Below the pieces are notes generated by a model. The model was not told the origin of the DNA and searched no databases. It saw only the letters and a list, made by a program, of their open reading frames with translations. DNA of 64,000 bases from Lepidodermella squamata (lineage: Eukaryota; Animalia; Gastrotricha). The translations under genes were made by a program, and so were the position numbers. This document shows, one piece after another, positions 3,035-64,000 of this stretch; the stretch's first letter is position 1; the number at the start of each line of letters is the position of its first letter. The stretch is from the NCBI GenBank assembly GCA_047495785.1, contig JBLDXI010000003.1, forward strand, positions 3,038,001-3,102,000, in the 5' to 3' direction.

Positions 3035-4981
3035 CTACGGCGTTAGCGTCGTTGTCGTCGATGTGGTCGCCGTCGTAGTAGTCGATGTGGTCGCCGTCGT
3101 TGTTGTCGATGTGGCCGCCGTCGTAGTAGTCGCGACATCAACCTGCGATTCGCATTCCTTCTTGCCCGCTTGTAGCAGCAGCTGTTTGATCAATTTCCGG
3201 TCAACCTTCGCCCTGATGGTCAAGCTGAGCGGAATAACGCTCAAATCACTGTCAGCATCAGCACGAGACACCGATGAATCACGGCGGCATTTGACCGGCT
3301 TGCGAGTTCGGAAAATGTGGCTTCGATCTTTCGGTTCATGTTTCGGCTTGTGAGTCGACGAGGCAACGGTCGTTTTGCCACCGCTATGACGAGGCTTATG
3401 GGTCTTCTTAACCCAGCCTTCAGGCTTGGCCCGGGTGACAGCATCGGAATCGCCGCTTGATAGTGCTTTTGGACGCTTCGATGATTTTCTGGTCGGATGA
3501 CTGGGCTGGGCGGTCACCTCACGCGGGCAGGTTGTTGTGACCTGATCGCTATCCGGCTTCGTCGGCTCCGCTTCGACCGGGGTCGTTCGCCTTCTGCTTG
3601 GACGCCTCGTGGTCGCGTGCTCACTTTCGACAGGTGCCGGAGTCGTTCGCTTTTTCCATTTCCTCGTCGTCGCCGGCTCGCTTTCGTGGGTCGGGACATG
3701 CTTCGTGGTCAGTTCCGGTTCAGGTAACACGACAGGAGTGGTCCGTTTCTTTGACCTTCTCGTCGGCTCAGCTTCGTGAGTAGGGCCATTTTTCTTAGTT
3801 GGTTCAGCCTTCGGAGTGGTCGCTTCAGGAATCTTCGGCGTTGTAGCAGCTTGAGTCGGTTCCGGTTCAGGAGGCACGTAAGGAGTGGTGCGTTTCTTCG
3901 ATCTCCTAGTCGTAACTGGCTCACTTTCGTGGGTCGGGACATGTTTCTTGGTCGTTTCCACGCACGCTGTGGTCGGTTCCGGCTCAGCTGGAACGTATGG
4001 CGTGGTCCGTTTCTTCGACCTTCTCGTCGTAACTGGTTCGCTTTCGGTCGTTTCAGGTTTGCTAGACACTTCAGGAACCTTTGGCGTAGTAGCAGCTTGA
4101 GTCGGTTCCGGTTCAAGTGGCACGTAAGGTGTGGTTCGTCTTTTCGATTTTCTCGCCGTAACCTGCTCAGTCTCATGGTTCGGATCATTTTGTAATATCG
4201 GTTCCGCCTTCGGTTCCGGTGTCCCTTCAGGAATCTTCGGTGTAGAAGCGGCTTGGGTCGGTTCCGGTTCAGCTGGCTCGTATGGCGTGGTGCGTTTCTT
4301 CGACCTCTTCGTATCAGTCTCAACCTCCGCAGCTGGGGTGGTAGGATCGGCAATGCATTTCGGCGGTTCCGGCCAAGTTCCGGTCGTAGTGTCGCATATG
4401 ATTACAGGGTCTTCGCTATCTGGGTGGAAACCCGGGTCGCATGAGTACGTTACTTTGTCGAACCAGTTGAAGCGGGTGGTGGTGAACGATCGAGTGGCCG
4501 CGTGACCGTTTTCGATATGGGGCGGCTCGCCGCATGATGCTCGGATTACTTTAGCAAAATCTAAATGGGGAATATATTGAAATAATAAATAAAATAATCG
4601 AATTGATTCATTCGTTTCCAGCACTTACGTAATTTACCTTAATCCAAAATATTATTGAAAAATCATTCAAAAAATTTATCAACTCAAAACTCAAATAAAA
4701 TAATACAATTTTAATAACAAATTTTTTAATTAAATATAAAAACTATTAATTATTAATTATTTTGAAAAAATTGGCAACAGTTTGTGTCCGGAAAACTGCG
4801 GTAATTGAAATGTATAAAAAATCGAAATCAAAATCAAACCTTTCGGATGAGGCAGTTTTTCGGGATCTTCGCCAGCTTTTACTTCAAGAAACGAAAATGT
4901 TTTAAAGGTACTTGAATTTTTTTTGTAATTTTGCCTACCTGCAGCTAAAATTGACACCAGAATGACAATGAGCCGGACCAT
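3035..4981 (-). CDS. Secreted single-Sushi protein with long Pro/Thr/Glu and basic tandem repeats and a Thr-rich tail
   Basis: Signal exon MVRLIVILVSILAA, short exon 2, then CGEPPHIENG...CDPGF...W...PPKC followed by repeats like RRSKKRTTPYVPxEPEPTQAATTPK; TAG at 3035. Confidence 0.85.
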
Positions 4982-5628
4982 TGTTTCTAGGGGAATCTTG
5001 AATTTGAAACAGATAAAGTGATTCAGAAAACAAATGTGAAATAATAGTGTAAATCGATGTTGAAAATGACTTCTGTTGGCGTCTGTTGCCTTTTGAAAGT
5101 AAGCGCGACCCTGCCAAAATTGCGTAATATTTTCGTCGCGCCGCACGCGCTCTAATACATGGCGCGTGTCGGAATATTTTTGTCTACCTTTTGGACAATT
5201 TTTCTCCGTTCTTGCTGCTGATATTATTCTTCGTAACACAATGGACATACCGGGATTTGTCACTACAGATCGCGTGGTGTTTTCGATTCTTCAACTCAGA
5301 AAAAGGACCATCAGTTGTTGTTGGCAAAATACGATAACTTAAACCTTCCTTAAAAATCGGTGAATTTTCCAGAAGAGATACATACATCAGATCAGTTGAG
5401 GTAAACCTTCCCAAAAAAATAAGTAAAATTCTGAAATCATCATACTCGACCTTGGCGCTATGAAAATTATCCCCACAAGAATAAATCTTAATTCAAACCA
5501 GGCAACTTTTATTTTTGCGATAACATAGACTTTTTACAATTTCAGCAAAGAAATCAAAGCATTTGATAGTCCCAGACCACAATGATAAGATCCGCAAAAT
5601 GATCCACTTGACCAGACTTGTAAAATGG

Positions 5629-5790
5629 CTATCGACACCTAGCTCGATCGCACGGCGGTCTCTGGCAAATTATGGGCATCGAATATCGTCGGTAGGTATT
5701 ATGTTGTTTCGACGATAGCTTTCGCGTCTTGTAGCGAACCGATAGCTCGATAACGTACTCGGCAAATTTCGGAAACCAGGGATTCGACAT
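5629..5790 (-). CDS. Uncharacterised 53-aa microprotein, copy 1 (MSNPWFPKFAEYVIELSVRYKTRKLSSKQHNTYRRYSMPIICQRPPCDRARCR)
   Basis: ATG-to-TAG ORF conserved in three copies with many synonymous changes; TATAAAA at 5837-5843; AATAAA about 5508-5513. Confidence 0.75.
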   Translation of the reverse strand: MSNPWFPKFAEYVIELSVRYKTRKLSSKQHNTYRRYSMPIICQRPPCDRARCR

Positions 5791-5836
5791 TGTTAGACAC
5801 GAAAATGCTTGTAGGGTGAAACGATTTTCTCAGGTC

Positions 5837-5843
5837 TTTTATA
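5837..5843 (-). promoter_or_regulatory. TATA box of microprotein copy 1 (equivalents at 8364-8370 and 10737-10743)
   Basis: TATAAAAG on the minus strand, with 46 nt between it and the ATG in all three copies. Confidence 0.7.
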
Positions 5844-12367: not shown

Positions 12368-13955
12368 TTATTTCACGCATGACGGCATAGCAGTCCAGGT
12401 GAGCGTGTCTGGCCGGCAAACGATGACCTCGCGGCCTACCAGCGTGTAGCCGTCGAAGCACTGATAGAACACCTTATCAGCGATACTGCTCATCTGCGTG
12501 ATGTCGAAAGTTGAGTTTCGAATACGGCCCTGGCTCAACAGCGGCGCCATGCCGCACGTTGTCTGCTCAGTATCAGCCGTGTTATTGCCACTGCCCGGGA
12601 TGCATCGCGGTTCCGGCGTCCAGACGCCATCGAACAGGCAGACGATCGTCGCTTTGCCATCGGGGATGTAGTAACCCGATTGGCAGGCGAAGGCAACTCG
12701 ATCGCCGTCCATTGCTATTCGATTAGCTGGGAAGGTTTGGTTGAAAATGACCGCATTCGGCACAACAGGAATCGGTCCGCAATTGATGAGCTGGCATTTA
12801 GGGACTGACGACCATTTCAGGTCAGGATTGCAGCGAATCGTGCTGCTTTCGTTGACAATTCGATAGCCGCTTCGGCATCGATAGCGCACCGTTGAAAACG
12901 GCTGGCTTCGGGTTCCGACGAAAGTTTGGTCCTGGACAAAGCCGTTCTCGACAATAGGCGCCGGGCCGCAAGAAGCTGAGAAAAAATTCATTTTATTTAC
13001 GAAAAATTAAATATTATCAATTTTTTTAATTCGGAACGTAAAATCAATTTCCCCAAATTTTTCGAAATTTAATTTCAATTTTTTCGAATTATTTTCTAAT
13101 TTGACCTAGATTATGACAACTCTTACCATCTGGTACGCATTTTGGCGGAATCGGCCAGGTTCCATTCGGGTTGCACGTGATGGTCGGATCCGTCCATTCA
13201 GAATGGAAACCCAGGTCGCAAGCATAGGTCACCTTGTCGAACCAGGTATAACGGGTCGTAGTATAAGACCGAGTCGCCGGGTACCCGTTGTCGATTTGCG
13301 GCGGATCGCCACACGCCGTGATGATCAAACTTCCATATTCTGCGAGAAATTAACAACAAAATAAAAAATTCTGAATTGTTCAAGGCATCTTACGGCAGAC
13401 TGGTTTAGGATTAGACCAGGTCCCATTTGGTTGGCAGACAATTGTTTCGGTCGAAGTCGCCGTCAAGCCGATCGCACACGTGTAGATCACGGTCGATCCA
13501 ACCTGGCTTTGATCGAGCGGGAAATTAGTTTTTACCTGAGCGGTACGCACATCAGGCGCCGGGCCGCATGTGGTTACGCAAAGGGGCAAGGCAGTCCATT
13601 GCATTGTGTCCCCATCGCAAGTTATCGTAGGATCGCCTATAATGATGAAACCGTCGTAGCAAGCATAGGTCGACTGGTCACCCTCCACGCTTGATCGGTT
13701 GTTGAAAGTTGTTGTAACCACCCTGGCGTGTTGGATGTAAGGCGTTGCTCCACAAGTGATTGGAACTGTATTTTATTAAGGCGGATTATTTAATTATCTT
13801 TTGAAATTTCACAAAAAATTACGTCTCAAGCGGCGATCCGTGAACGGGTTCAAGGCGTAACGGCGAGGGCCTTGAGTCGAAGGGCGGCTTGTATAGAATT
13901 GCGCCTCAACAACGGCAACAGTTAAGACGGCTGCCAAAAGGCATGCGCGTAACAT
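12368..13955 (-). CDS. Secreted protein with 6 Sushi/CCP domains
   Basis: Signal MLRACLLAAVLTVAVVEA; four exons; six C-x-x-x-P...Y-x-C...G...C...W...P-x-C modules; TAA at 12368. Confidence 0.88.
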
Positions 13956-14663: not shown

Positions 14664-17600
14664 TTATCTTCCACTCCTAGCTTGTCGGCATTCGAATTGA
14701 ACCGCCCAGGAGCCGTCCGCTAAACACGTGACTCTGTTCGATTTTCCGATCAAGTTCCAACCGTCTTCACACATGTAAGTGACAGAATCGCCCGTAACAC
14801 CAGTCTTGGACTGAAAAAAAATGATTATTTTTTCGAAATATTTCGGGCTGAAAAGGTATCCTAAACCTGTGGATTCGAAAACTGCCTCACGAGCTCCTTA
14901 GCATTAGCCAAGGCTGGCGGAACACCGCAACCTGGTGATGCATTTCCTATGGGAAAAAAATTAAATATCGAAAAAATTTCTCAATAAAAACTCAAAATTC
15001 GGGACGAAATTAGAAAAATTAGATTTTGGTTATTAAATTATAATTATATTATTTGTTACACGGCGACAAAAATAAAAGAATAAGCGAGTTATTGAAACTT
15101 ACTCTGACAGCTCGGAAGAGGGCTCCATTGAAGCGTGAGGCGGTCACACGTTATGGTCGCACTGCCCCTCAGGGTGAACCCGCTATTACAGGTAAAGGTC
15201 ACTGTGTCACCCGGGGTTGGGCGTTGACCTGACCCAACATCAAACGATGCCGTTTGAATATTCCCATTCGGTACCGTATTCGGGTTCGGGCAATAACTAG
15301 GCGCCGCTGGAGGGGGTGGTGGTTGAGTTGTTGCCCGGGTTGGAGGTGGGGGTGGAGGGGGTTGAGTCCTAACGGGGGCTGGGGTAGGGGCGACTGCTAC
15401 GGAATCAACATCAAGAGAATTAATTGCCAGATTATTAATATAGGTCCCCCTTAAAAAATCCGCCCCTTTTTTAACACTACTATCCCTGACCGCCCAAGTC
15501 TTACGAGGTTGCAGTCCAGTGCCCAAACAACGTGGCTCAGGGGTCCATTTGCCGTCGAACAGGCAAACAATAGTGAGCCGGCCGCCGGCTGGTGTGAAAC
15601 CAGAATTGCAGCGGTAAATAACGCGATCGCCATCGTACGGCGATGATTCAAAGCTTTTCGATTCGATTTCACCGTTTGAAATCTGAGGCGGGTTCGGGCA
15701 GGCCTTTTTCGAGCTATCGCGTTGTTGCCGCTCGCACGTTGGCATGGTTGACCATCGAGAATTCGCCTCGCAGGTAACAGTATCCGGGCCATTGAGTTTG
15801 AACCCACTAGCGCAGGCGTAGACAACTTTTGACTTCAACTTGCTGCCTGAGCCGGTGAAGTCTTGGGAACGGACGTAGCCGCCCGATAGCGTTTGAGGCG
15901 CCCCACAAGCGGCGACCGTGCTGGCTTCGACGCAAGTCGGTACCTCAGACCACTCGCCGGTATCTTGGCATCGAATCGTGGATGCTTGCTGATTTTGGAA
16001 GGTGAAGCCTTCGTAGCATTCGTAAGTTGCCGTATCACCGCTAGAATTTTAAAATATTTGAAAAAACGCTCAAAGGAGCCAAAATTAACGGAAAATTAGA
16101 AAAATTCAAAAAATTGCAAAAAAAATTGAAATAAATCTGGAACTTCTTTCCCAGCTATGAATCATATTTCAAATTATTTTGGGCAAATACTTTCATTTTA
16201 AAGTTTGAAAACAAAATTCAAAAAAATTTCAAAATTCGAGAAATTTAAATTCTTAAATTTTCAAAAATTACCAAAAAATTGAAAAAATTCGAAAATAATT
16301 TTTGTTAGCCCTGGTTATTCGGCTTACACTTTAGCATGGTCCCCGCTGAATGAAAATGTTGAAGCAGCCGCGTTCATAACATTCGGAACGTCATGACATA
16401 GAACTTCGCCGCCAGATGGTTGAGTCGGAGGTGGGCCATTCGCATCTGGCTTGCAGATAGGTTGAGCTGACCAATAGCCATTATCACAGCGAATCGTTGC
16501 ATCGTTCATCAAACGAGTGCCACTCATGCAGGAGTACGTTACTGAATCGCCAGATTTGCTTTGCTCCTCGACGAAGCTTTGGTATTGGACTTCGGCGTAG
16601 GCGACAGTCGGCGGGCCGCCGCACGATGCTTCGCAGCTCGGGTAGTGGGACCATTGCTGGGAGCCGAGGCAAACGATTGTGTGATCACCTACCATACTAT
16701 AGCCATTATTGCAGGAGTATCCGACCTAAAATAAAATAATATAAAAATTCCTAATTAAAAATGACCTAATTTAAAAATTATTAAGCTGGATTTTTTATTT
16801 TCCAAATAATTTTTTATATAATTTAATTACCTGATCGCCAACTTTGGAGTATTTTCGTTGCATTGTTGTAGTAACGATATAGGCGTATTCAAGGGTAGGC
16901 GCTTCCCCGCAAGTTTGGCCAACTTCAAAAATGTGAAAGAAATTCGCGGATAATTCTGAGATAAAACTAAAACGAGGAGAAATACCATCAATAGCCTGAG
17001 CTTCAGAGCTAGGCGGAGTTGACCGGTAGTATTGGGCCCAAACATCGACCGGCGTAGTTTTAGTCGACAGCTTCGATGGATCCTCTGATTTAATTAATTA
17101 ATTAATATTTATTATTTAGGTTGAAACTCACGGCAAATCGGTGATCCAGACCATCTGCCATCCATTTGACAAATAACACCTGGAAAATGCGGCTTTGTAT
17201 TATTTTCTAGTTCAAATTAGTTGTTAATTTCACCATCGCCAGTTATAAGCGTTTTGCCGTTGATGCAATTGTAACGAGCCATTGATCCAGGGATACTTCC
17301 CTCGCCAACAAAATCTCGGTCATACTCGACGGCGTTTTCAACCTCGGGCGGGTTGCCGCATGATCGCGTGCATATCGGGTGCTGTGACCACGCTTGCGTC
17401 TCCCACTCGCACGTTATGGTCGTTGATTGCTGGTTGGTGAAGGCGTAGCCGCGCTCGCACGCGTACACGGCTTGGTCGTCCGGGCCAGAGCCGACATCGT
17501 CGGCGTAGGTCTTCGAAATCACGCGGCCGTATGGAAACATTGGCGGCTCGCCACATGTGAAAGGTCGCGCTAATTATCAAGGTCAAACAAATAAAATTAC

Positions 17601-31476: not shown

Positions 31477-31625
31477 CGTAAATAAAACCGATAAAATTTC
31501 TAAAATTCAAGGAATAAATGTTGTTTAAACTCAATAATTTTCATTTTCTGCCCAATAAGGCTAAATAAATAAATATATTCATTTAATAGCGTAGGGCTCC
31601 TCTCAACCTTTCATCACAGATACGC

Positions 31626-38200: not shown

Positions 38201-38799
38201 GAACGCCCTTATGATCTAAATTTTAAGAAAATTTAAAGAAAATTCACTGACATTTTTGGTGATTTTACCGCATGAGGGGAGGCCTGACCAAATGCCATCG
38301 CCAAGACAGGTAATAATGTCACTATTGCGTAGGGTGAGTCCAACTTTACACGCGTATTTGACCGTGGAACCGGTGAGGCTCTGGTCACCATAGAAGTCCT
38401 GTGAAATGATAACCGAACCCTCGACCATCGGCGCACTGCCGCATGTCATGAGGCAGACAGGCAAATGCGTCCACTGTTCGATATCCGGGTCGCACGTGAT
38501 CGTCGGATCGCCAATCATCAAATAGTTCATTATGCACGCATAGGTCACCGTGTCGCCCTGGACACTCTGCGTGCGATTGCGCAACGAATTAGCCGAAACA
38601 TAGGCGTAATCGACCTCTGGAATTTCGCCGCATGTCATCGGAACTAATTAGGTCGAAAAAATGCGATACAATTTTTTTTTGTTAATTAAGGCGGCTCACT
38701 TCTTATTGCAGCATTGACCTGCCGTTTATCCCGAACAGCGACACCCAGGGTGACGGGTAACAGTAGTAACAGGACACCAGCGAGCCGGTGCAGTTTCAT
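35237..38799 (-). CDS. Secreted protein: about 10 Sushi domains plus divergent C-terminal VWA
   Basis: Signal MKLHRLAGVLLLLLPVTLG; first six Sushi modules colinear with gene 12368-13955; MNFAID...RTVYLT...RIFVIALG; ends FQDFMCSV*. Confidence 0.87.
36577..36633. repeat. Perfect AT-rich palindrome (28-bp arms, 1-nt spacer) in an intron
   Basis: AATTTCTAAAAAATATTCTTAATAAATC-T-GATTTATTAAGAATATTTTTTAGAAATT. Confidence 0.9.
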
Positions 38800-48900: not shown

Positions 48901-51414
48901 CCTGAGAAGGTTTGAGATTCAACTCGAGCGTTGACAACCTGGGGCGGTTGGCCACAAGTTTGGTAGTTGCATGATGGAACTGAGGTCCAAGAACCGGTCT
49001 GCCCATTGCAAACAGCGGTGTCAGAATTTCCGATTGAGTAAGAACCCAAGCAGCGATATTGAACAGTCGAACCACCTCTGCTGTTTGTACCATTGAAATC
49101 TTGATAGACAACCTCTGCGTTCAAGATGAAGAGAGCAGGGCCACATGAAAGGGGCGGCGAGCACTTTGGAATTTGAGTCCATCCTAAAGGTTGTGTCTGG
49201 CATGTGACTGTCTCCATTCCGTTCATTATGAAGTTGTTCTCGCATGCAAAAGTTGCGACTTCACCGCCTTGCTGGTTAGGAGTTGTATCTCTGAACGAGA
49301 CCATCTTCGCAAAACGAACCGTTGGCAGTTGTCCGCAAATCGTATCTGTAGTAAGATAAACGAAAGGTTTGAACTAAAGCTCAGGGATGGGGCTTACTTA
49401 TTATTGCTGCATCAGTGCTGGTTGCGCCGCCCGATGGCTGTCTTCCACTGATGGTGGTAGTGGCTGTGAGAAGTCTGCAAGCCGGGACTGCTGACCACCT
49501 GCCTCCGTTACAGGTCACAACGTCCTCGCCAACGATTTCGTACCGATCATAGCAACCATAGATAGCCTGAGTTTGATCATCGCTGATTCGCAGCACTCGT
49601 CCGTTGTCGATAGCAGGCAGAACACCGCATCTCGGCGTGCTCTGAGTTGTTGCTCCAGTGTTCGAAATGCATCGAGGGATGACTGACCAAGTTCCATCGG
49701 CCAAACACGATACAAAACCACTGGCACTCAACGAGTAACCATTGTTGCAGGCGTAGGTGATGTTTTGGCCTGGACGAGCCGACTGGGCTAGGGGGTAAGT
49801 TGCCGAAACAATCTCGCCGTTAGCTATCGCAATAGGGTCAGGGCATACTACGTCTCCAGTGGGGTCAGCTGTAGGGATTCGCGATTTAAGAACTGAGAAT
49901 CAGAAATTAAGGCAGGTACTTACTAGCAATCGGAACGCTGGTCTTAGCGACTAGTGAAGAGAAGAAGAAAACTTAGTTATAGATAGAAACTAGAGTCGAA
50001 GTGATTTACCGCAAATAGGCAGAGTTCCCCAGAATCCATCGTACCCGCAAATGACCAAACTAGTTCCAGAGCTGAATTCGTAACCATCCTGGCATTGGTA
50101 CCGAACTTCGCTCAACGGGACTGATTTCGAATCGGAAAAGGTTCGACTGGTAACTGTTGCAAGCTCAATCTTAGGAGCTGGTCCACAGGTAACAGTTGGG
50201 GCTGCTGTTGTAGTCGAGGCGATTGTCGTAGTTTCCGGGGTGTCGGAAACACAGAGCGGAACAAGACTCCATCTTGAAGATTCCTGGCATGTAATCCGCT
50301 TGTTGCTGCCCTGTGAAATCTGGTAGCCTGTTTGGCATTGATAGTCGACAGTATCGCCAACTCGGCTGATCTTCTCGAAGGACTTGTAAGTGATGACAGC
50401 ATTAGGAATCTGCGGATCACCCCCACATGAGGCTAGTAAAGATTCAAGCGTAAGTAATTAGAGAAATTTGAATTCCAAGGTGGACTCACCCATACAAACT
50501 GGTAATGTCGACCAAGTTCCGTCATCTTGGCAGGTCGAATAGAAGTTTCCTTGAAGAGCGAAACCTTCATTACAAGCGTAGTTGACGTAATCCCCGGCCA
50601 TGTAGACTCCATTCGAAGTTCGAGCTACGATGTACCCATTAGGAATGGGAAGAGAATCTCCACATCTTGCCAGATCATTTCCTAAGGGAAACCTTTAATT
50701 GAGCTGAATAAATTTCAGTGAAAATTACGATTTTTGATCATTGTGATGCTTAGAGCCACAATTCGACCAGTTGGGTTCGGTTGTAGTTCCCCGGGAGCTT
50801 TGAGTTCCTTGACATCTTTCAATTCTTGAAGCGATTGGAAACCAACATAAGTTTGATACATGTTAGTCTCAGCATCACTGGCGCCGAGTTTGTAGGGCAA
50901 AATCAAAGAAGACTGAGCCGGCAAGTCCCAGCGGTCGTAAAAGTAACCGAAATACTGACCAGTCTGGACTTTCAACTGCCTGCTAAGAGGCAGGGCGACA
51001 GTTTGCCAGCCAACATCAAGAGACTGAAGGTCGATCGCTACGAAATTTACGAGCTTGAACGATCCTGTTCGAAGTGGGATCGCCTCGAAAGTTGCCAGGT
51101 AAAATCGAGTTGTCGACGTAACTGTCTGCCGGTTGATGAAAGAAACTTGCGAGACAACTCCATCACACTCAGCTTTCATCCACAGTAAAATGTGGAGTAG
51201 CCCACTGGCTAAAGGGTAGGAATTAGGGGCACTGACATTTGCAGGAATACCGGCAGAGCATGCTAGAAATAAAATGTGAAAAATTCCACCTTAATAAATG
51301 AAAATTCAGACTTTCAACAAGTTGGCGTCTTCCGACTTGAATTCCAGCTCCAGAGGCCAACGCCACGCAAATCGCCAGGCCTATAAGGCATATTACCAAA
51401 TCTCGCCCTGTCAT
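39945..51414 (-). CDS. Giant secreted protein: unknown N-terminal domain, about 35 Sushi domains, divergent VWA
   Basis: Signal MTGRDLVICLIGLAICVALASG; N-domain WMKAECDGVV...GYFYDRWD...TYVGF; contiguous Sushi exons; LIFALD...RIVYLT...RIFVFAVG; ends FQNYFCGPK*. Confidence 0.83.
43233..43316 (+). tRNA. tRNA-Leu(CAA), intronless, located in a host intron
   Basis: GTCAGGA/TTCTGAC acceptor, CCAGA-CTCAAGA-TCTGG anticodon arm, long variable arm, GTTCGAAC, downstream T run. Confidence 0.95.
45535..45777. mobile_element. MITE with 8-bp target-site duplication (P/hAT-type)
   Basis: ~90-bp TIRs CAAG(T/G)GATGTTAAGTACCGGATGCAG...; TTTTAACG duplicated at 45527-45534 and 45778-45785. Confidence 0.88.
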
Positions 51415-52559: not shown

Positions 52560-55500
52560 TTAAATTCTATAAGCCATCGATGGCGATTTGGCTGTGCACA
52601 AAAAGTTGAGAAAATTTGTTTCCGACAACAAATTAGAACTGAGCAAGGAACTCGACGCCAGGACGCGAACGAAATTCGGGTCGGAGGCGATTGATTTTTT
52701 GTACGCACCCTGCAAATCGGCATCAGTTAATGCCGATCCAACGCCAATTACGTAAGTCCTCATGGCGCCGCGTAAATTACGAATTGACGCCAATTCCGTC
52801 GCGGCGTTATCGACACTTGAAACCGGCCGGCGGGTTGAAGTTATCAGTACAAGTCGAGTTTCATATTGCAACGGCAAGACTGGTAGAATTCGAGTCCTGA
52901 CTATGCTCAATAGTCGCTGCAAATCTGTCGGGAAGATTACAACAGGAATAGGTTTAACACTTGAATCAAGCCAGCCATTCCATCGAGCGAAATCGGTTGG
53001 ATTAACCGATGTATCCAGGGTAACAATTTGCTCGGTTGTATCGAGCCCTCTTGCCTGGAAATTCGCCCCGCCGTAGCCGATCTTGACCGAATTTTCGACA
53101 AGGCTGCGAATGGCAGGTGGGACAGATTTCATGAAGGAAATCAGCTCATTCGCGTTATCGTTGTTAATACTGGCAGATTCAGCGAAATCGAGGATGAAAA
53201 TAACATTCAGACCCCCTGCTGGGCAGTTTATTGCTGAATTTGAACCCTTGGGTTGAAGAGGCTGGGCAGGCTGAAGCGCCGGCTGGCCATTTGCGGTTTC
53301 AGGCCCGACGCAAACTGGTAAAATCGACCAAACTCCACTAGGTTGGCAGGTTACGACCTGATTTTGCGTATTAGCCGGGGCAGCGCGGCATTTGTAAGTG
53401 ACTTTATCGCCGACGATGCTTCGAGTTTCGCCAACTGGGATTGTTGTATCGACTACGTCAGCGTTTGCTACGAATGGCCGGATGCCGCATGTTACGGCGT
53501 CGGTTGAGCGGATGGTGCAGGTTGGTAGGGGTGACCACAGGCCAGTCTCGCGGCAGCGGACCCGCGCTTCGCCGCTGATGACGAGAGGCGCTTTGCAGGC
53601 GTATTGAACAAAGCTGTTCACGGTACTGGCTGAGCCTTCGAAGTTCCGATCGGTTTCAAGTGCGTTCGGCACGATGGGAGCAACTCCACAGGTGGCTTCT
53701 ACGGGTAAAGAAAGAAGTTGAAAGTAGATGAAGATAATCAAGCTTCAAAAAATGTATAAAAATTAATTTTAATGAAATTAAAAAAAAAATTAAAAAAAAG
53801 TTTGAAATTGAATTTTAAATTTTAAAATACATTATTAAATTAAATTTCAAAATTTATTAGGCCTAAAAATTGAACTTACGATTGGTTACAGCGCTGACAC
53901 AAGTTGGCGATGAGCTCCATTTCCCACCCGCTTGGCAAGATACCGTTCGCGAGCCGATAAGGTTAAAACCAGCCCGGCACTGGTAAGTCACAAGGGTTCC
54001 GGTTTTGCTTTCTTGGTCGACAAAATTGCCGCTGATTATGCCGTTTTCAACATCTGGAGGCTTGCCACATGTATCCACTGCAAAAATTGCAAAAAATTAG
54101 AATGACAAATCTTATTACGAACTTTAAAAATATTCAAATTTAAAAGAAATAATTTTCAATTTTAAAAATATTTTTAGTAAATATTTTAAAATTTTAATCT
54201 AATTAATTTTTTAAAATTGCGGAATTGTCTTACGTTTCTTTGGTCGACAAAAGGGCTGAGCTGTCCATAGGCGAGTGGCTTGGCAGCGAATAGCGGCACT
54301 GCCGACGATTTCCAGCGAATCAGGCCGGCATTCGTACCAAGCTACGTCACCCTCAACGCTTGCGGAACCTTTCACCGTTGAAAACGTTACTACAGCATTT
54401 TGAACTGTTGGAATCGCGCCACATCCGCTAGCTACAATTAAATTACGAAATTCGATGAATTTTCTCGGAAAAATTATGCAAACCTTGGCTACGGCATTGC
54501 GGCGGATCGCTCCAGTTTCCGTCCTGGAGACATACAACCTGAGCGCTATTTCGGTCGATCACAAAGCCCGGGTTGCATTTGTAGGTGATGTAGTCACCCT
54601 GTTTCGAGGCTGATGTTTCGCTGAAAGATCGCAATTCTATAACTGCATTAGCAACAAGAGGAGCTGTGCCACATAAACCAGGGTCTGAAAATCGAATTTC
54701 AAATAAAGAAATTCGAAATAATTAATTCAGAATTCATACTTAATTTGCATTCGGGCGGAGATGATGACCAACGACCATTAGGTTCGCATGTCAAGACTTG
54801 CAACCCAGTCATAGTGAAGCCGGGCGTACAGCCGAAAACATAAACTCGGCCATCAGCACTGCTGTGAATTATGCGCGAATTGGGAACACCCGGTAAAGTG
54901 GGACATTTGAGGGCGACCGATTGACAAACGGGAAGTGAGCTCCAAACACCAGTCGAAGTGCATTGAACAACGGATTTAGCAGGGTCTACGAATTCGTAGC
55001 CAGGATTGCAAGTGAAAGTTATCTAAAAACAGAAAAAATGAAATGAAATGATTAAATTAAATTATATTCAAATTAATTTAAAAAAATGTACGAAATTAAT
55101 AAATAACATAAATTCAAATTGTAATAATAGATAAATGAGTTAAACATTAATTAAAAAATTACCTTATCGCCATCAGTTGCAACCAATCCTTGAAATGTTT
55201 TTTCGCTAATTCGACCGAATTCGACTTGCGGCAGTGTTTTACAACTAGTAGCCGGTACGCACTCAACCGGCTCCGTCCACGTGCCATCAGCGCCGCAAAT
55301 GACGTAATTATTGACCCTGTCGCCAACTTTTTGCCTGAATTGATAACCCTCCGCGCATTCGAACACGATAACTGAACCTGTTGGGGCGTTGAAAAGATTT
55401 CCAGCCGGAATGTTGGAGAACACGCTAACTGCATTGCGGATTTCAGGCCGTGGTCCGCAGGGCTTGGAAGTCGGCAGCTGGTTCTGCTGTTGGCACCTTG

Positions 55501-58500
55501 GCGGTTGGCTCCAGGTTCCGTTTCGAGTGCAGACGGTGTTATCTTTACTGCCGGATGTCAGAATGTTAGGTTCGACGCAACGATACTGCACTTTACTGCC
55601 TGTTGAGCTTGAACTGCCTTCGAAGTCTTTGAAAATCGTCACGCTATTGTCAACTCTCGGCGGGGCATTACATGTTGAAACCGCTGGCACAAAAAATAAT
55701 AATAAAATGTAAATAATCGCAAAGCTGTTTGCATAAAAATAAAGACTTGGAGCAATAATCACAGTTTTAAATTTTAAATTTTAAAATTTTTATCAAAATT
55801 GAGTAAGGGAAAATTTGTAACCAGTAAATTTGTAACAAAATTTGTTTCCAGCTTTTTTTGCGTTTTTTGCAATTTTGAATTTTATTACGGATCAATAATT
55901 AGCCAAAAATGACCCTGAGACCTTTGGATTTTTATTTTAGATACCTGGTACCCTTTGCCATTTTAAGGTAGACCGTCAAAGCAGCAAATAGCCAAAACAG
56001 CAAATGCGACAAAACAGCAAATTTTTAAACTTTCGAGATAACAGCAGAAACACGGTGCATCTTTTCCATAGAAGGCTTTTGCTGTTTAGTCGCGAAATAA
56101 AAAAAATTCTGTTTCGTCGCATTCGCTGTTCTGCGAAGTTGCTTTTTTGTCGCCGTACTCATTTTAAATGTTTGCTTTCAAGGCTACTGAAACCGAAAAA
56201 ATCACTGATTAATGAAATCGATGTCGGTTTTGTGGTCTTTAATCACGCGTCACAGTGGAATCTATCGGTTAGGTACGATAATAAAAAAAGATTCAAAGGA
56301 GAATTTGAAACCCGAAATACTATGATGTGTTGGCGCTGGAACCTTAGTTTTGGAACTGGAACCCTCAATTTCGAGTGCACGCTTGACGTATCGAAAATTG
56401 AATAATATAAATTTGTAAATTCCCTAAATTTCTGATTTAATTTAAAAAATTCCGAAATTCGAAACTCGAGCTCACTTTGGTCTCTGATGCAAGTTGGCAG
56501 TGGATTCCACTGATTGTTCGAACACGTTGAGACAGGGTCACCCGAAATAATGTAGCCCTTATCGCAGGCGTAAATGACCTTGCTCGACGAGGTTTTCTCG
56601 AGCACATAGCCGTTCGCGACATTCGGCGGGTTGTTGCAACCAGGAGCGGCTAAAATATGTTATAAAAAGTAACGATAATTAGCTTGATCTAAGTCAAAAC
56701 CTCTAAGAAGGCAAAGAGGCGGGGTAGACCACGCTTTATCAATGCAATAAATGCGTTCGAAGCCAGTTAAAACGTAATCGGTATTGCATTCGTATTCCAA
56801 CCAATCAAGCCCGCCGTTGGCAGTTGCATTACTACGTCTAGTCACCCTGCCGTTTTGAACAACAGGCTCCGCCGGGCAGGGAACTGGGCGCGTCGAAATA
56901 GGCGGCGGTAGGTCACGCTGGTCAGAAACTTCGATGCAGATTGGGACATTCGACCATTTGCCATTGGCGAGGCAAGTCGCTTGATCACGTTCGACAGTTT
57001 TGAAGCCGCTATTGCAGCGGTAAGTGGCTACGTCACCTTCTCTAGCGGTACCCGTGCCGTAGGTGGTGCGAGTTACAACTCCATTGCGAATTTCAGGCGC
57101 GCGACCGCACTCGGATCTAACGCAGCGCAATTGCGAGGGTGACCACTGTTTGTTAGCCCGACATGTGATTAGGATATTCGAGGCGTCTCCAGCGATTTCG
57201 GTGCCAGGATCGCATGAATACTCTACTTCGTTTTCGTTGGTCATTTTCACGGGCAGAGCGCGTTCGACGCTCGGCGGCCGTCCGCAAGGCGACGTTTGAG
57301 CAAGACCTTGACGAAAAATTGAAACAATTAATTTTCCAAAATTCAGAGATTTATTATTTTAGATTTATTTCTCATTCATCTTAGGGAAATATTTTCGAAT
57401 GAATAATTTCGAAAATTCTCAGACACATTGAACTGAAAAACAAACCAGCGTGGCGCGACAGTGGCGTGTCAAACACGCGCCCAAGTTGTTTTTTATGACA
57501 TGTTAAAACGATCGATTAAGGTGGGTGCAGGGTTTCAAGGTTAAACCGACTGGTTGGAAAGTGGAACAAAACAAGCTCGCGATTTCGGTATTAGGACGAG
57601 CACGTGGAAATTAATTGGAGTTGCATAACAACCCTACCTATCGGCCTATATAAACTTCGGTCGGCAAATCAATTTTCATCAAGCGTCTTCTCTTGTATTC
57701 TCAATTTATCAAGTGAATATATTTTTCCGAAACTTAGTGAACATGCGCGCTATTTTGGTTGTGGCTGTTGTCGCCCTCTTCTGCATCGGTAATATCCTGA
57801 AATGCGAATCCACATATGAAAAGTTGCATTTTTCAATAATTTTTAGTCGCCACCTCGGCGAACCTTGGGGTGTGTTTTTTTATTCACCCCGAATTTTCGG
57901 GTCGCCCACTTCTGAAGCTCACCTTGAAATGAAACTTTGGAGCTGTGCAGAAGACTTCATTGCCCGAAAACCTCTGGTGTTTACATCGAAAAATTTGTCA
58001 TCCGGCGCCTACACCTGAGCTTCCCGAAATTCCGGGTAGAATAAAAAAACACACCCTTGGCAAGCGTGGACGTGGCAACAATGTTTCCGCCTCGGTGAAC
58101 AAGCGCTCTGCCTCCGCCTCGGCCGGTGACAACCGTCGCGGTGGTCGCTTCTTCGGCCACAAGGGTCGTCGCGGCAACTTCGCCTCTGCCTCCGTCAACC
58201 GCCGCTCCGCCTCGGCTGCTGCCGGCAACAACCGTGGCCGTCGCGGCTTCTTCGGTCGCCGCCGCGGTGGCAACTACGCCTCGGCCTCCGTCAACAAGAA
58301 CTCCGCCTCGGCGAGTGCTGGTGACAACCGTGGTCGCCGTAGCCACTTCTTCGGCCGCCGTGGCTCCCGCTCGTCCCTGTCTGGTTCCTTCTCCGGCCGT
58401 CGCCACGGACGCGGTTTCTATGGCCGTCGTCATGGTGGTCGCTTCGGTCGCCGCGGTTTCGGATACGGCCGTCACGGTCGTAGTGGATTCTACGGCCGTG

Positions 58501-61500
58501 GTCGCCATGGCTACGGCTACGGTCGCTTCGGCCACCGTGGCTACTACGGCAGCAGCTCGTCCTCGGCCGGCGACTTCTACGGCCGTCGCAATGGCTGGTA
58601 CTGGCATTAAGCGTATTCGCGGAAGAACTTTTTTGCTCAAGAGTCGATTTTACGTCGAAATGCTAAATTTATTTATCCATACGGTTGCAAATAAGAGCAA
58701 GATTATAAGAGCGAATAAGATGACAATTTTTCTTTCCTATTAGATAATTTTTAATCGAAAATAATGCGAACTATCTTGGTTTTGGCTATTATCGCTTTGG
58801 GCTGTATCGGTAAGGGCTTAAGGTCTTCATCAGCCATTTAATCTTTGCTGTACCTTTTTAATAGCTCTCAGCTCTGCCACCTTCAACCAGAAGGAGGGCG
58901 GCCACAAGGGTGGTTACGGCAAGGGTCATGGCAAGGGTGGTCGCCGTGCCTCTTTCTCCGCCTCGGTCGACCAACGCGACACCTACGACCGCAAGTCCGC
59001 CTCTGCTGAGCAAGAAAACGGTGCCGTCGACTACGCCTCGGCTGATGCTTCCCACAACAAGAAGACCAGCGACAAGCGCAAGCTGATCAAGACCCGATCG
59101 GCCAGCGCAGAACGCGCCTCGGCAAACTACGAATCTGCTGGCAAGCGCGACTCCGCCTACGACCAGAAGAAGTCCAAGGCCGGCAGCAAGCGCCGTGGTC
59201 GCAAGATCCGTGAAAGCGCCTCGGCCGCTCAAGCCCAGCACGCCAACGCCTACGCCGACTCTGGCGCCGCTGCTGCTGCCCAGAAGCACCGCCGCAACAA
59301 GAAGCACGGCCGTGCTGACCACAAGCGCAAGGCTGCTTTCCACAAGGACCAGGCCCGCGACAAGAAGGGCGAGGTGATCGAGTTCAAGAAGAAGACCTTC
59401 GCCGACAAGGGCCACAACAAGGTCAACAAGTTCAGCTACGAATCTGGTGCCAAGAACTTCGGTGCCTACGACTCCGATGGTGCTGCCACCACTGCCACCC
59501 GCAAAAAGACCGCCAAGAAGGCCCATGGCAAGAAGGCTCGCCAGGCCCACTCTGCTGCCTACGCTTCCCGCGACTCGAAGGCCTCGGCCGCCGCTGCCTC
59601 GAAGAAGGCGAAGCGCAACAAGGCCCACCACCGCCGCGCCTCAGTCTCCGTCGCCCGTGACTCGCGCAACTCCCGCAAGTACAAGGCCAGCAGCAAGAAG
59701 ACCTCCGTCTCCGACTCTGCCCACGCCCGCAAGGCTGGAGCCAAGCACAGCCGCAAACGCGCCTCCGCCTCGGCTGAACGCCGTACCCACGACTTCCGTG
59801 GCTCATTCTCTGCCGGCGCTCGTGACTACGGCCGCGGCAAGAAGGGTGGCAAGCATGGCTACTACTACTAAAAACTTGATTCAAGCTGCCTTGTGAGATC
59901 AAATTATTCTTCGGTCTGAAGTGATGTTAAATTATTTATTAAGGAATCACCGAAATGTCCATGAAAATAAAGAGAGCATCAAGTTTTCATTCGCAACTTT
60001 TTTCGATTTTGCCAATTTTTTCGCTTTTGCATGAAATCAACAGAAAAGACTGTTTCTTGCCGAAATTAAGATGTAAGGAACTTACGATCAGATATGTTGA
60101 AGCATTTCGGGAAAGGCGTAGACCAGCCATCGAATCGGCATATAATCTCCGGCTTCGAGTTGACCTCCAGCTGGGCGCCTCGAATGCACGCATACTTGAC
60201 CACAACACCCACCCGACTTTCACGGGTCTGCATCACCTTGTCGTAGTCGAATCGATCAGATACAACGGCGTTCTCAATTGTTGGAACACGAGAGCAGTTC
60301 AAATCGCGCCGACATTCAGGCACATTCGTACTCCAGCGCCCATCAGCCATGCACGTGACCTCAGGCGCGCCTCGCAAAATTAGGTCAAATTCGCCAGATA
60401 CGCACTTGTAACGCACGTAGTCACCCAATTTACTCGTTGGCCCAGTTATAGACGATGTCTCAATAACTCCATTCGTTATATTAGGAGCAGGGCCACATGT
60501 CTCTAAATTCACAAAAAAAAAATTCAAAAAAATTCAAAAATAAATATTGAAAGCTAACGAATGCATGGTGAGATGTCAGTCCATTTCCCGATTTGGCAAA
60601 TTGACGTAGATTCCCGGCCATTTAAAATGAAGCCGGAGATGCATTCGAATGTAACGCTATCCCCAGTGAAACTGTCAGTTCCGGTCATATTTGACCTTAT
60701 TTCACGAGCGTTCGAAAAAGTTGGCTTAGGTCCGCATGTCCCTTTATAACAGAAAATGGGTTATTTTCAATTTTTTTGAAATTTTTCCTCGCTAACGTTC
60801 ACAGTGCGGCTTTTCGCTCCACGCGCTCCCACGACACGTAATTTGCGTAGGAAATGACTTAACAAACGCATAGCCGCTATTGCATTGATAAATGACGACA
60901 TCGCCATCTTGAGGTCGTGATTCATCCTTCAATAACCGGCGGTTGATTGAGGCGAAGTCAACGTCGGGAATTCGGCCGCAAGTTGGAATTTCAGCCACAC
61001 ATCTTGGGATATTTAGCCATTGCCCGTTCGAATAGCAAAGCGTGTCTTCGCCGATTTTCGGCTGCTTTTCGAAGCCGCGATTGCATCGATAGCGGACCCA
61101 AGACCCAGCTAAACTGCGGTCGTTCAAAAAATTGCTGTCGTCAATGGTTCCATTTGCGACTACTGGCGGAGATCCACAAGTTCCTTAATAATTCGACAAA
61201 AATTGAATATTATTAAAAAAATTAAAATGAAAAGAATGAATAATAAAAAAAATTAAATTGAATTTTTTTTAATTTCCTAAAATTTTAGAAAATAGGTAAT
61301 TTTTTTAATTTACTCAAATGTGTTCGATTCAGATTTTCAATTTTCAATTCTTAAGAATGATTAACATTATTATTATTTTTAGATTTTTCAATGTCTTAAA
61401 TTTCTAAAAAAATTCTTCATTACTTACTGATGCATTCGATGGTTGGCGACCATCTCTGAGTTCGCGGGTCACATTCTGCTGTATCGTCGCGGCCTCGCAA

Positions 61501-61736
61501 AATAAAGCCAGACGCACAGGTCACTACTACAACGTTGTCCCGAACTGTTCTGACCGAAGAAGCGTTTGCAATCTCCGGAGCTTTGCAGACCGGTTTTTGT
61601 TCTGAAAAACAGATAAAAATTTCGTATTAATATTTTTTTCAGCTGGAGCTAATTAATTCATACCCCTTGGACTTTCATTATAATCAAGTGCCAATAAAAT
61701 AGGAAATAGCGAAATAGCTACTACAACCGACTTCAT
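52560..61736 (-). CDS. Secreted protein: about 19 Sushi domains plus divergent VWA; hosts B4/B5 in a 2.8-kb intron
   Basis: Signal MKSVVVAISLFPILLA; phase-1 donor GTAAGT at 60085 joins in frame to the exon starting 57306; VIFILD...RLVLIT...RTYVIGVG. Continuity across the large intron is inferred. Confidence 0.75.
55968..56158. repeat. Degenerate inverted repeat (old MITE) in intron
   Basis: AACAGCAAATGCGACAAAACAG versus CTGTTTCGTCGCATTCGCTGTT arms. Confidence 0.55.
57743..58610 (+). CDS. Secreted Arg/Gly-rich protein B4 (paralog of B3), exon 2 interrupted by a MITE; pseudogene unless the insert is spliced out
   Basis: TATATAAA about 57647; exon 1 57743-57788; exon 2 from 57847; 192-nt insertion with in-frame TGA at about 57930; downstream sequence intact. 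Confidence 0.75.
57869..58055. mobile_element. MITE inserted in B4 coding exon
   Basis: TIR GGTGTGTTTTTTTATTC...CGGG / CCCG...GAATAAAAAAACACACC; CTTGG duplicated (alternative parse: GGG..CCC ends with TTG duplication); absent from paralog B3. Confidence 0.9.
58764..59871 (+). CDS. Secreted cationic Ala/Lys/Arg/Ser-rich protein B5 (350 aa, ends HGYYY); paralog of B2
   Basis: Exon 1 58764-58809 (MRTILVLAIIALGCI), intron 58810-58864, exon 2 open to TAA. Confidence 0.92.
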
Positions 61737-61899
61737 GATCTTAAGTTAAAATTAAAATAAACCTTTCGGTAAACATAAAGGTCCAGACTCTATTCATAGG
61801 AATTTCTCAATAAGGGTTATTTTTCGCACTTCAACTATGAAAAGTACTGAAAAACGTCATCAATTCAGGTATTTGTTTATAGGGTATAATGACGGGTTT

Positions 61900-64000
61900 T
61901 TAAAGAAAAGCACCTGAGATAAACTCGGCTTCCTTTAATTCGGCTTGCACTTGCGAATTCAGCGCTCCACCGAGTACTAAGATAACGAAAAATTCTCCGC
62001 CTAAAAAAATGTAGCAAGAAATAACTCACCGCAAACCGGTGTTGGAACCGACCACCTGCCATCATCCCGGCAAGTTACCGTCGCCATATTATCGACCAAG
62101 TTGTAACCCGAATCACAGGCGTAGACCAGGGCGTCACCGGCAGTTGGCCGGGCGCCAAGATAGCGCCGTTGCGAAACAAAGCCGTTTCGAACAACCGGCT
62201 CAGAGTCGCAATATTTGACTGTTGCGATGCATTCGGGCAATCTAGACCAGGTCCCATCTGATTGGCAAACTGCGGTTGATAGTTCGCGGTATAATTCGTA
62301 ACCAGCGTTACAGGTAAATGTCGCGACTGCGCCAACTTCCGGCCTCGATCCCGACCATTGCCGTCGGGTTAGTAACCCGTTCCGGATCATTGGATCCGGG
62401 TCGCAATATTTTGGTAGGGAGATGCATTCGGGTAAACTCGACCATTTCCCATCTGATTGGCAGGTAGCAGTTGCCCGGTCTTGGTATAACTGGAAGCCGG
62501 GGTTGCAATTGAAGGTCGCAATCGCCCCCACCCCAGGCTGTGAGCCAGTCCATTGACGTGTGACGAGTTTCCCGTTACCAATCCAAGGTTCCGGGTCGCA
62601 GTATTTCGGGGCGATCGCGACACATTCGGGCAAAACTGACCAAGTTCCATCTGACTGGCAAGTTGCAGTTGATTCTCCTCGGTAGAGTTCGAACCCAGAG
62701 TTACATCTGAACCTGGCTACGTCACCTGGGCCAGTTTGGGACCCAGACCATTGCCTGGTTTCTATTATTCCGTTTCGAATCACGGGGTCGGGTTGACACA
62801 ATTTCCGACTTGGGACACATTCAGGCAAAACAGACCAAGTTCCATCCGATTGGCACGTCGCTGTTGATTCGCCTCGGTATAGCTCGAAGCCAGGGTCACA
62901 TTTGAACCTAGCTACGTCACCTGGACCAGGTTGAGATCCGGACCATCGCCTAGTTTCTATGATCCCGTTTCGAATCACAGGTTCGGGTTGGCATGACTTC
63001 CGACTTGGGACGCATTCAGGCGATCTCGACCATTTGCCATCGGGCTGGCAAGTCGCCGTTGAAATGCCGTCTCGAAATTCGAAACCAGGCGCACAGGAGT
63101 AGTTCGCAACTGCGCCGATTTCCGGTAAAGTCCAGGACCAACGCCGTGAGCATAAAATTCCGTTCGGTATTTCTGGCTCCGGCCCGCATGACGGTGTGAC
63201 TTTCACGCATCTTGGAACCGGGGTTGACCATTGGCCATTACTACGGCAGTTAATTCGACCGGCTTTTGGGTTTTCGAGTTCGTAACCCGGGTTACACGTG
63301 TAGGTGGCAGAGTCGCCGATTTCGGGATCGTCTTCTCCACTCGATAACCGATATCGGCTATTTGGTACTGAGGGAAGTTGGGCGCATGTCGTTTTCGGAG
63401 GCTGAGGCTTTACTGCTGGCTGAGGTTTCGGCGGTGGAGCTGGATCTCCGGCAGCTATGAAATTTGCAAGCAAAATTTTAGGAAAATTAAACAAGAAATG
63501 ACATACGGATGCAAACTGGTAGAGCGCTCCAGATGGCATCAGGCTGGCAAACGATGAACATATTTTCCACCATGTTGTAGCCGGAATCGCATTCATAAAC
63601 TAATTAATGATAATGTACACAAAAATCGTGAAAATTAAAATTAAAATTATTTTACCAATAAAATCGCCTGCCGTGTTCCGGTCGACTGCCGATCCTGTGA
63701 CGGCTCGAGCATTCCTCACTTTAGGAGGTGCGCCACAAGACAAAGACCGATCAACTACAATTTAAAAAATTAGCAAAATATTACTAAGAAAATTCAAGAA
63801 AATTAAAATTATAAATTATCCAAATTGAAAATTATTTAAATTTTAAAATTTAATATAAATTCTAGCTCATTTGTTTTACCTTCAGGTGAAACTTTGGCGA
63901 TAAGAGCCGGAATTCTAGATTGAACCGTAACACCCAGTTCGATCGCATAGCGGAGCTCCTGAACTTGGCGAATATCAGGCAGCGATAGGAAACCAACATA
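61900..64000 (-). CDS. Sushi-array protein, 5' partial: end of the unknown N-domain plus about 8 Sushi domains
   Basis: 64000-63880 reads YVGFLSLPDIRQVQELRYAIELGVTVQSRIPALIAKV; large exon with tandem near-identical Sushi units; probable last exon ...EAEFISGAFL*. Confidence 0.8.

What the first reader, a model, noticed from the sequence alone, without database searches (positions are those of the whole stretch)
3035..64000. Candidate secreted-biomaterial locus: Sushi-array scaffolds interleaved with cationic low-complexity proteins
Seen: ten co-oriented Sushi genes with no transmembrane anchor or protease domain (signal peptides in the nine whose 5' ends are in the window), physically interleaved at three sites with five signal-peptide, K/R-rich genes with Cys-free mature regions and strong codon bias. 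Known: invertebrate glues, egg capsules and cocoons often combine large modular VWA/mucin proteins with cationic Gly/Tyr/His-rich proteins. Inference: a two-component, co-secreted structural system (adhesive, eggshell or coat) rather than a complement-regulator cluster. I do not recognise it as described.
Basis: partly seen in the sequence, partly recalled or inferred. Interest (0 to 1): 0.85.

Follow-up and report, generated by a model that had tools for sequence, protein, structure and literature searches.

The report
Sushi gene array hosting cationic-gene insertions
In a tiny animal (probably a gastrotrich), ten old genes for long secreted scaffold proteins share 61 kb with five young, apparently highly expressed genes for positively charged secreted proteins, but the latter look like later insertions rather than the second half of one glue or eggshell.

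Summary
The anatomy is confirmed. Ten minus-strand secreted Sushi genes (108 domains, no membrane span or protease) and five Cys-free K/R-rich genes lie at three sites. The two-component reading is not supported.

Two of the three cationic sites most likely lie antisense inside Sushi introns. The cationic pair is a recent inverted duplicate (1.8 kb, 83% identical) with no Sushi DNA attached, whereas Sushi domains of different genes are mostly 35-65% identical. Codon bias separates the classes completely (0.85-0.98 vs 0.45-0.54). TATA boxes precede 3/3 lead cationic genes but only 1/9 Sushi genes. The Sushi proteins are near neutral, so they are not polyanionic partners.

Metagenome contigs of an unidentified animal hold a domain-for-domain orthologue of the largest gene (54%) and a complete paralogue, with other neighbours and no cationic genes (flanks of 2-3 kb only). 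The scan had already noted such cationic genes on other DNA of this scaffold, about 70 in 1.1 Mb (unchecked), so five here is expected.

What remains is an apparently undescribed, conserved secreted layout: a lectin-like jelly-roll, up to 35 Sushi domains and a degenerate VWA.

The parts
61900..64000 (-). S1, partial secreted Sushi gene (8 domains in window; 5' end beyond window; recent 195-nt internal repeats)
52560..61736 (-). S2, signal peptide + 19 Sushi + VWA-like domain, 1517 aa; intron 57307-60085 holds C2b and C3b antisense
   Evidence: splice across the 2779-nt intron is inferred, not shown by RNA
52563..53225 (-). divergent VWA-like domain of S2 (paralogues end S3, S4, S5); no canonical DxSxS MIDAS
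   Evidence: no Pfam VWA hit
39945..51414 (-). S3, signal peptide + unnamed jelly-roll domain + 35 Sushi + VWA-like, 2886 aa; has a collinear orthologue in L005
50730..51260 (-). unnamed ~175-aa beta-sandwich N-terminal domain of S3 (paralogue in S8 at 18959-19504), galactose-binding/lectin-like fold
35237..38799 (-). S4, signal peptide + 10 Sushi + VWA-like, 946 aa
32683..34621 (-). S5, signal peptide + T/P linkers + 3 Sushi + VWA-like, 545 aa, no protease
31626..32295 (-). C2a, cationic G/R/S protein, 205 aa, own TATA box; first gene of the pair
30399..31476 (-). C3a, cationic A/K/S/R protein, 338 aa, 149 nt after C2a, no TATA
24818..29718 (-). S6, signal peptide + two Cys-rich PAN-like segments (by eye) + Thr-rich mucin-like block + 4 Sushi, 1075 aa; last intron 25069-26178 holds C1 antisense
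25357..25840 (+). C1, cationic K/S/G/R protein with long (Ser-X)n runs, 143 aa, own TATA box, nested in S6
20091..24600 (-). S7, signal peptide + 11 Sushi, 839 aa; a tRNA-Leu lies in one intron
14664..19567 (-). S8, signal peptide + jelly-roll domain + 11 Sushi, 1054 aa; a tRNA-Gln lies in one intron
12368..13955 (-). S9, signal peptide + 6 Sushi, 441 aa
3035..4981 (-). S10, signal peptide + 1 Sushi + T/P/E/K/R-rich repeat tail, 518 aa (the only mildly basic Sushi protein)
57743..58610 (+). C2b, inverted duplicate of C2a (89% aa), nested in S2; exon 2 interrupted by an insertion
57868..58056 (.). 189-nt element with 34-nt terminal inverted repeats and TTG on both sides, inside C2b; removable as a GT-AG intron in frame (unproven)
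58764..59871 (+). C3b, inverted duplicate of C3a (85% aa), 350 aa, nested in S2

Best explanation
Two independent secreted systems share one stretch of chromosome.

(1) An old tandem array of extracellular-matrix or surface-coat scaffold genes. Each makes a near-neutral, probably glycosylated rod of Sushi modules. The largest have a lectin-like jelly-roll domain at one end and a degenerate VWA domain at the other. I infer that they act as moderate-abundance tethers or spacers between a glycan surface and another matrix protein.

(2) A fast-moving family of short, TATA-driven, probably very highly expressed cationic genes that is spread over this scaffold. Copies landed here by local duplication, twice backwards into Sushi introns and once between genes. 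They most likely form a bulk material (egg shell, cuticle or glue) and probably do not need the Sushi proteins as counter-ions. Their (Ser-X)n runs alternate with Gly/Arg/Lys blocks and could supply internal negative charge if phosphorylated (inferred by analogy with caddisfly silk).

Shown: gene anatomy, duplication pattern, codon bias, charge, orthology. Inferred: splicing across the nested genes, expression levels, all functions.
For: Nesting: a consensus phase-1 donor ends S2 exon 5 and a phase-1 acceptor opens the next Sushi exon, with no start codon or signal exon between them. The last intact Sushi exon of S6 lies beyond C1. Six of the eight Sushi introns over 500 nt carry a passenger: cationic genes twice, tRNAs three times, an inverted-repeat element once. 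The duplicated block (30393-32175 vs 58055-59877) is 1843 nt at 83% and covers only the cationic pair; dS 0.13 and 0.35. Sushi domains of different genes are mostly 35-65% identical. Preferred-codon fraction is 0.85-0.98 vs 0.45-0.54, with no overlap (p=0.0007). A TATA box lies at -82 to -96 in 3/3 lead cationic genes vs 1/9 Sushi genes (p=0.018), and no 6-8-mer is shared beyond multiple testing. Sushi proteins carry -1.5 to +1.3 net charge per 100 aa (S10 +3.8) and have no acidic block. The S3 orthologue in L005 is followed by a tetraspanin-like gene; the paralogue in L009/L007 lies between a possible glycosyltransferase-like ORF and an ion-channel gene; no cationic ORF was found in L001-L007 by scan or among the ORFs listed for L009. 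Nested genes often arise by relocation into introns (PMC13343718).
Against: No expression data. Flanks around relatives are short (about 2-3 kb; 18 kb for the more distant L003), and the cationic genes evolve fast, so their absence there is weak evidence. No relative of S5, S6 or the S2 intron region was found. A minor organiser protein need not share codon bias or promoter type with the bulk protein it organises. Negative charge could be added to the Sushi proteins by glycans (Thr-rich blocks; up to 15 N-glycosylation sequons). The density of cationic genes on the scaffold comes from unchecked AI notes. Some antisense nested genes induce their hosts (title of PMC12274878; not read).
Confidence: 0.6

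Rival explanations
1. Loosely coupled two-component material. The cationic proteins are the bulk phase, the Sushi proteins are low-abundance organisers or anchors made by the same secretory cells, and the cationic genes were retained here because the region is active in those cells.
For: All 14 complete genes have signal peptides. There are three separate cationic sites in one array. Flatworm glues combine a modular vWD/EGF protein with a separate GRKHS-rich protein, and a multi-Kringle protein is proposed to bind its lysines (PMC9229212). Sushi+VWA proteins occur in mollusc shell matrix (PMC11291548). S10 has a mixed-charge K/R-containing tail.
Against: No shared promoter word, opposite codon bias, no charge complementarity, recent independent movement of the cationic pair, and no cationic neighbours around relatives. 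Another note reports similar genes nested in an unrelated astacin-MAM gene (s1-398126, unchecked).
Confidence: 0.22
2. Defence or recognition locus: the Sushi proteins are secreted pattern-binding or complement-like scaffolds and the cationic proteins are antimicrobial polypeptides.
For: The best solved-structure relatives by sequence are factor H and CR1. S5 has the three-Sushi + VWA layout of the factor B N-terminal part (own knowledge). The N-terminal domain has a lectin-like fold. Gly/Arg/His-rich cationic proteins can be antimicrobial (own knowledge).
Against: These matches are generic Sushi matches; database hits were all 30% identity or less. There is no protease and no canonical MIDAS. 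S3 is conserved domain for domain at 54% in another species, unlike a fast-diversifying receptor. The cationic proteins are long, have (Ser-X)n and repeat blocks typical of structural proteins, and have few processing sites.
Confidence: 0.1
3. The Sushi genes are secreted synaptic or neural matrix organisers like C. elegans LEV-9 or Drosophila Hig/Hasp, unrelated to the cationic genes.
For: LEV-9 is secreted, has eight CCP domains and clusters acetylcholine receptors; Hig and Hasp do similar work (PMC9083331). Low codon bias fits a low-abundance protein. One relative lies next to a ligand-gated channel gene.
Against: No WAP or Ig domain in the Pfam scans or models. Mucin-like linkers and VWA ends fit a coat or matrix better. 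The channel neighbour is a single case.
Confidence: 0.08

Closest known systems
Flatworm adhesive proteins ap1/ap2/ap3 (Macrostomum, Minona, Theama; PMC9229212)
   Same: A separate secreted low-complexity G/R/K/H/S protein (ap3) works beside a modular Cys-rich protein; flatworms are the likely sister group if the animal is a gastrotrich.
   Different: ap3 is 3700 aa, C1-C3 are 143-350 aa. ap1 uses C-lectin/vWD/C8/TIL/EGF, and the paper never mentions Sushi. No sequence relative of C3 was found.
Caddisfly H-fibroin (PMC10387566)
   Same: (Ser-X)n runs alternate with Gly-rich charged blocks; the runs are significant in C1, C2a and C2b (p=0.0005).
   Different: No (SX)nE consensus, far smaller proteins, no fibroin termini; phosphorylation untested. 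Analogy only.
PifCCP and other Sushi/VWA shell-matrix proteins of molluscs (PMC11291548)
   Same: Secreted matrix proteins joining VWA with many Sushi repeats.
   Different: There VWA is N-terminal, with chitin-binding and laminin-G domains. Here the VWA-like domain is C-terminal, too divergent for Pfam, and neither other domain was seen.
SVEP1/polydom and CSMD-like multi-Sushi proteins
   Same: Very long secreted Sushi arrays; these names label many of the database hits.
   Different: Hits are 23-30% identical; no pentraxin, EGF, HYR or CUB seen; different domain order.
Complement regulators (factor H, CR1) and factor B/C2
   Same: Tandem Sushi-only secreted chains in a gene cluster; S5 has three Sushi + VWA.
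   Different: Generic similarity only; no serine protease; MIDAS not canonical; no evidence on C3 binding.
LEV-9, Hig and Hasp (PMC9083331)
   Same: Secreted invertebrate multi-CCP scaffolds outside complement.
   Different: No WAP or Ig domain; ten tandem paralogues with jelly-roll, PAN-like, mucin and VWA-like additions.

Membership tests
Two-component co-secreted biomaterial | both classes secreted | tested here: met
   hydrophobic N-termini in all 14 complete genes, no membrane span; hydropathy only
Two-component co-secreted biomaterial | expressed in the same cell and stage | not testable with these tools
Two-component co-secreted biomaterial | shared control or similar expression signature | tested here: not met
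   codon bias disjoint; TATA 3/3 vs 1/9; no shared word; small samples
Two-component co-secreted biomaterial | charge-complementary partner | tested here: not met
   Sushi proteins near neutral, no acidic block; glycan or phosphate charge untested
Two-component co-secreted biomaterial | linkage kept in evolution or duplicated as a unit | tested here: inconclusive
   the cationic pair duplicated without Sushi DNA; relatives lack cationic neighbours but flanks are short
Factor B/C2 | Sushi-VWA followed by a serine protease | tested here: not met
   all four VWA-like domains end the protein
Factor B/C2 | canonical DxSxS MIDAS | tested here: not met
   Asp is followed by a spaced, variable motif in all six domains
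Regulators of complement activation | binding or decay of C3b/C4b | not testable with these tools
   only generic sequence similarity
VWA superfamily (C-terminal domain) | VWA fold | tested here: met
   Atlas features 0.93 to VWA clusters, 10/10 agree; VWA domains fill the top ranks, Z 10.6, rmsd 4.2, 166 aligned, though the model is weak (pLDDT 48); Pfam cut-off not met
Carbohydrate-binding jelly-roll (N-terminal domain) | galactose-binding-like beta-sandwich fold | tested here: met
   model pLDDT 76; Z 10.3 to a Bxb1 tail-tip domain, 8.6 to the Cwp84 lectin-like domain, about 5.5 to CBM6/32/35
Carbohydrate-binding jelly-roll (N-terminal domain) | sugar binding | not testable with these tools
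   a shared fold shows no function; nearest Atlas clusters are unnamed
Flatworm ap3 / GRK-repeat adhesive protein | sequence homology or kilo-residue GRKHS repeats | tested here: not met
   no homologue of C3 at E<=1 within the length window searched; 143-350 aa; G+R+K+H+S is about 60-65% in C1/C2 vs 88% in Tmed-ap3
PifCCP | VWA + chitin-binding + laminin-G domains | tested here: not met
   domain maps show neither domain
Lepidodermella squamata genome (identity of the organism) | direct sequence match | tested here: inconclusive
   122 Mb, 157 contigs, 43% GC in PMC11660948 vs 1991 windows on 147 pieces and 44% GC; consistent, but no direct match was possible

The most novel reading that the evidence does not exclude
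The locus is part of the parts list of a gastrotrich body or egg covering, in which lectin-like/Sushi/VWA-like rods of graded length (1-35 modules) act as rulers or anchors that template a self-assembling polycationic, possibly phosphoserine-rich phase. It would be the first molecular account of a gastrotrich material, and a design not described from other animal glues.
Probability: 0.2. Interest if true: 0.75.

Novelty: new variant of a known kind. Interest (0 to 1): 0.3.

Why it matters
My literature searches found no molecular description of gastrotrich glue, cuticle or egg shell. The conserved S3-type scaffold (unnamed jelly-roll, many Sushi, degenerate VWA) and the orphan cationic genes are both concrete probe targets. 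But the special claim here, that their interleaving reveals one system, is probably a by-product of a dispersed, mobile cationic family. The cationic family itself has already been reported several times by this scan on neighbouring DNA.

Tried and rejected
- Spliced models were searched exon by exon, by reference.
- Homologue searches for C3 found nothing (blind to much longer or shorter kin). C1 and C2 were scanned only against Pfam (no meaningful hit).
- The S6 PAN-like region gave no hit.
- The metagenome scan with the S3 VWA half returned one bacterial false positive, L008. P0055 is a generic Sushi protein.
- My first guess of a nematode, from the astacin gene, was dropped for lack of support; the genome statistics fit the gastrotrich lead.
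- A first promoter scan was confounded by coding sequence and redone masked. The CGG+TATA pattern was read off the same three promoters, so its exclusivity is circular and only the TATA count is used.
- Reading S2 as two or three genes was rejected because no start or signal exon exists for the downstream parts. An early stop of S2 at about 60066 cannot be excluded without RNA.
- Acceptor-like sites before start codons are not clearly enriched overall (36% vs 23% in random DNA).
Full report
Observation. The window is animal DNA with small introns (median 57 nt), 44% GC and no CpG depletion. A profile built from the window's own Sushi domains finds them only on the minus strand, and Pfam confirms Sushi. 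A simple gene finder, corrected by eye, gave ten genes with GT-AG introns and open frames, S1 (partial) to S10, with 8, 19, 35, 10, 3, 4, 11, 11, 6 and 1 Sushi domains, 108 in all. Nine have signal-like N-termini, and none has a membrane span or protease. The five cationic genes are real: 143-350 aa, 22-29% K+R, no mature Cys.

Organism. Other notes of the scan suggest the gastrotrich Lepidodermella squamata. Its published assembly (122 Mb, 157 contigs, 43% GC; PMC11660948) fits 1991 windows on 147 pieces, but I could not match sequence directly.

The Sushi genes. Four end in a domain that Pfam misses but that the Atlas and a structure search both place with VWA (weak model); its MIDAS is not canonical. 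S3 and S8 begin with an unnamed 175-aa domain that folds as a galactose-binding-like beta-sandwich (pLDDT 76; best Z 10.3). Its nearest Atlas clusters are unnamed sponge and bacterial proteins. The array is old: domains of different genes are mostly 35-65% identical. It is also conserved. Metagenome contig L005 holds an orthologue of S3 at 54% over 1609 aligned residues, matching domains 17-35 in order, with the VWA-like end at 64%. L009/L007 holds a complete paralogue: signal, jelly-roll, 18 Sushi, VWA-like. L001-L004 hold a more distant gene or genes mixing many jelly-roll copies, PAN, MAM and Sushi. The source animal of these contigs is unidentified. I found no description of this layout; the nearest are PifCCP, SVEP1-like proteins and LEV-9/Hasp.

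The cationic genes. There are three types. C1 and C2 are weakly alike (z 4.3) and C3 is not clearly related to either. C2a-C3a and C2b-C3b are one inverted duplication of 1843 nt at 83% identity, with dS 0.13 and 0.35 and dN/dS 0.53 and 0.29; no Sushi DNA was copied with it. C2b carries a 189-nt inverted-repeat insertion that can be spliced out in frame on paper. C3 has no relative in the searches run. C1 and C2 have significant (Ser-X)n runs between Gly/Arg/Lys blocks. This recalls the phosphoserine beta-motifs of caddisfly silk (PMC10387566), and the composition recalls flatworm ap3 (PMC9229212). Both are analogies, not homologies.

Are they one system? Six indirect tests bear on this.

(1) Position. 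C1 lies antisense in the last intron of S6, and C2b-C3b lie antisense in a 2779-nt intron of S2 (inferred from splice signals and the lack of another start). Six of the eight introns over 500 nt carry some passenger, including three tRNA genes, and nested genes commonly arise by relocation.

(2) History. The cationic pair moved recently and alone, inside an ancient array.

(3) Expression signature. The preferred-codon fraction is 0.85-0.98 against 0.45-0.54, with no overlap.

(4) Promoters. A TATA box precedes all three lead cationic genes but one of nine Sushi genes, and no word is shared beyond chance.

(5) Chemistry. The Sushi proteins are near neutral and have no acidic block.

(6) Relatives. 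Their neighbours are different and non-cationic, within short flanks.

Unchecked scan notes list about 73 similar cationic genes in eight clusters within 1.1 Mb around this window. That predicts about four per 61 kb, so five is unremarkable (P 0.35; rough, because the genes are clustered). Those notes also report such genes nested in an unrelated protease gene, and many Sushi-ankyrin arrays elsewhere.

Mechanism. Best reading (0.6): an old array of moderate-abundance extracellular tethers or spacers, and a separately controlled, mobile family of bulk polycationic material proteins that landed in it. Defence (0.1) and synaptic-matrix (0.08) roles are less likely.

Limits. Signal peptides and membrane spans were judged by hydropathy only. 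Spliced models were searched exon by exon, by reference; the joined search was left out, and joined models were used only in local scripts. No step needed referral.

Verdict. The conserved jelly-roll/Sushi/VWA-like scaffold is a new variant of a known kind of secreted multi-Sushi protein. Interest 0.3.

Noticed in passing
window 31477-31625 (-) and 58611-58763 (+): C3a and C3b start only 149 and 153 nt after the C2 stop, lack a TATA box, and both keep a strong unpaired splice acceptor 20-23 nt before the ATG although the spacers have diverged. This suggests a two-gene operon resolved by trans-splicing; note s1-374017 reports a similar case.
   Followed up: partly
window 57868-58056: Inverted-repeat element (34-nt arms, TTG on both sides) inside C2b exon 2 that could be removed as a new in-frame intron: a possible intron gain from a transposon. 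Single copy in the window.
   Followed up: partly
window 17921-17992, 23630-23713, 43233-43316: Three tRNA genes (Gln, Leu, Leu), each inside a long intron of a Sushi gene.
   Followed up: yes
window about 45540-45790: Element with long terminal inverted repeats in a 536-nt intron of S3, seen by eye.
   Followed up: no
window 5401-6100, 7952-8546, 10526-10707: Three diverged copies (74-80%) of a repeat, each with a 53-57-codon ORF on the minus strand; already noted as s1-398179. A decayed copia-type gag with a zinc knuckle lies between them at about 7258-7719.
   Followed up: partly
window 1-1600 (-): Astacin metalloprotease gene with a signal peptide and an EGF-like segment, co-oriented with the array and running off the window.
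   Followed up: no
window 51978-52357: 14-nt satellite between S2 and S3.
   Followed up: no
window upstream of S5 (about 35040) and S9 (about 14090): Both upstream regions carry AGTGCACTAA followed about 14 nt later by CAGGCGTGA, seen by eye: a possible Sushi-gene control element, absent from the cationic promoters. Not tested statistically; the S5 copy lies outside the 350 nt scanned.
   Followed up: no
window 39230-39300 (-): A short ATG-led, partly hydrophobic exon-like stretch with a GTAAG donor upstream of S4: a possible alternative first exon or remnant.
   Followed up: no
C3a and C3b proteins: Modest mirror symmetry of the sequence (self versus reverse, z 2.6-3.4), but C1 and C2a score similarly (2.3, 2.8), so it is not special to C3.
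   Followed up: partly
L003:2391-17888 and L002:13605-15285: An unidentified metagenome animal has a giant gene or gene row with at least ten copies of the unnamed jelly-roll domain mixed with MAM, PAN and Sushi. The domain has no Pfam family.
   Followed up: partly
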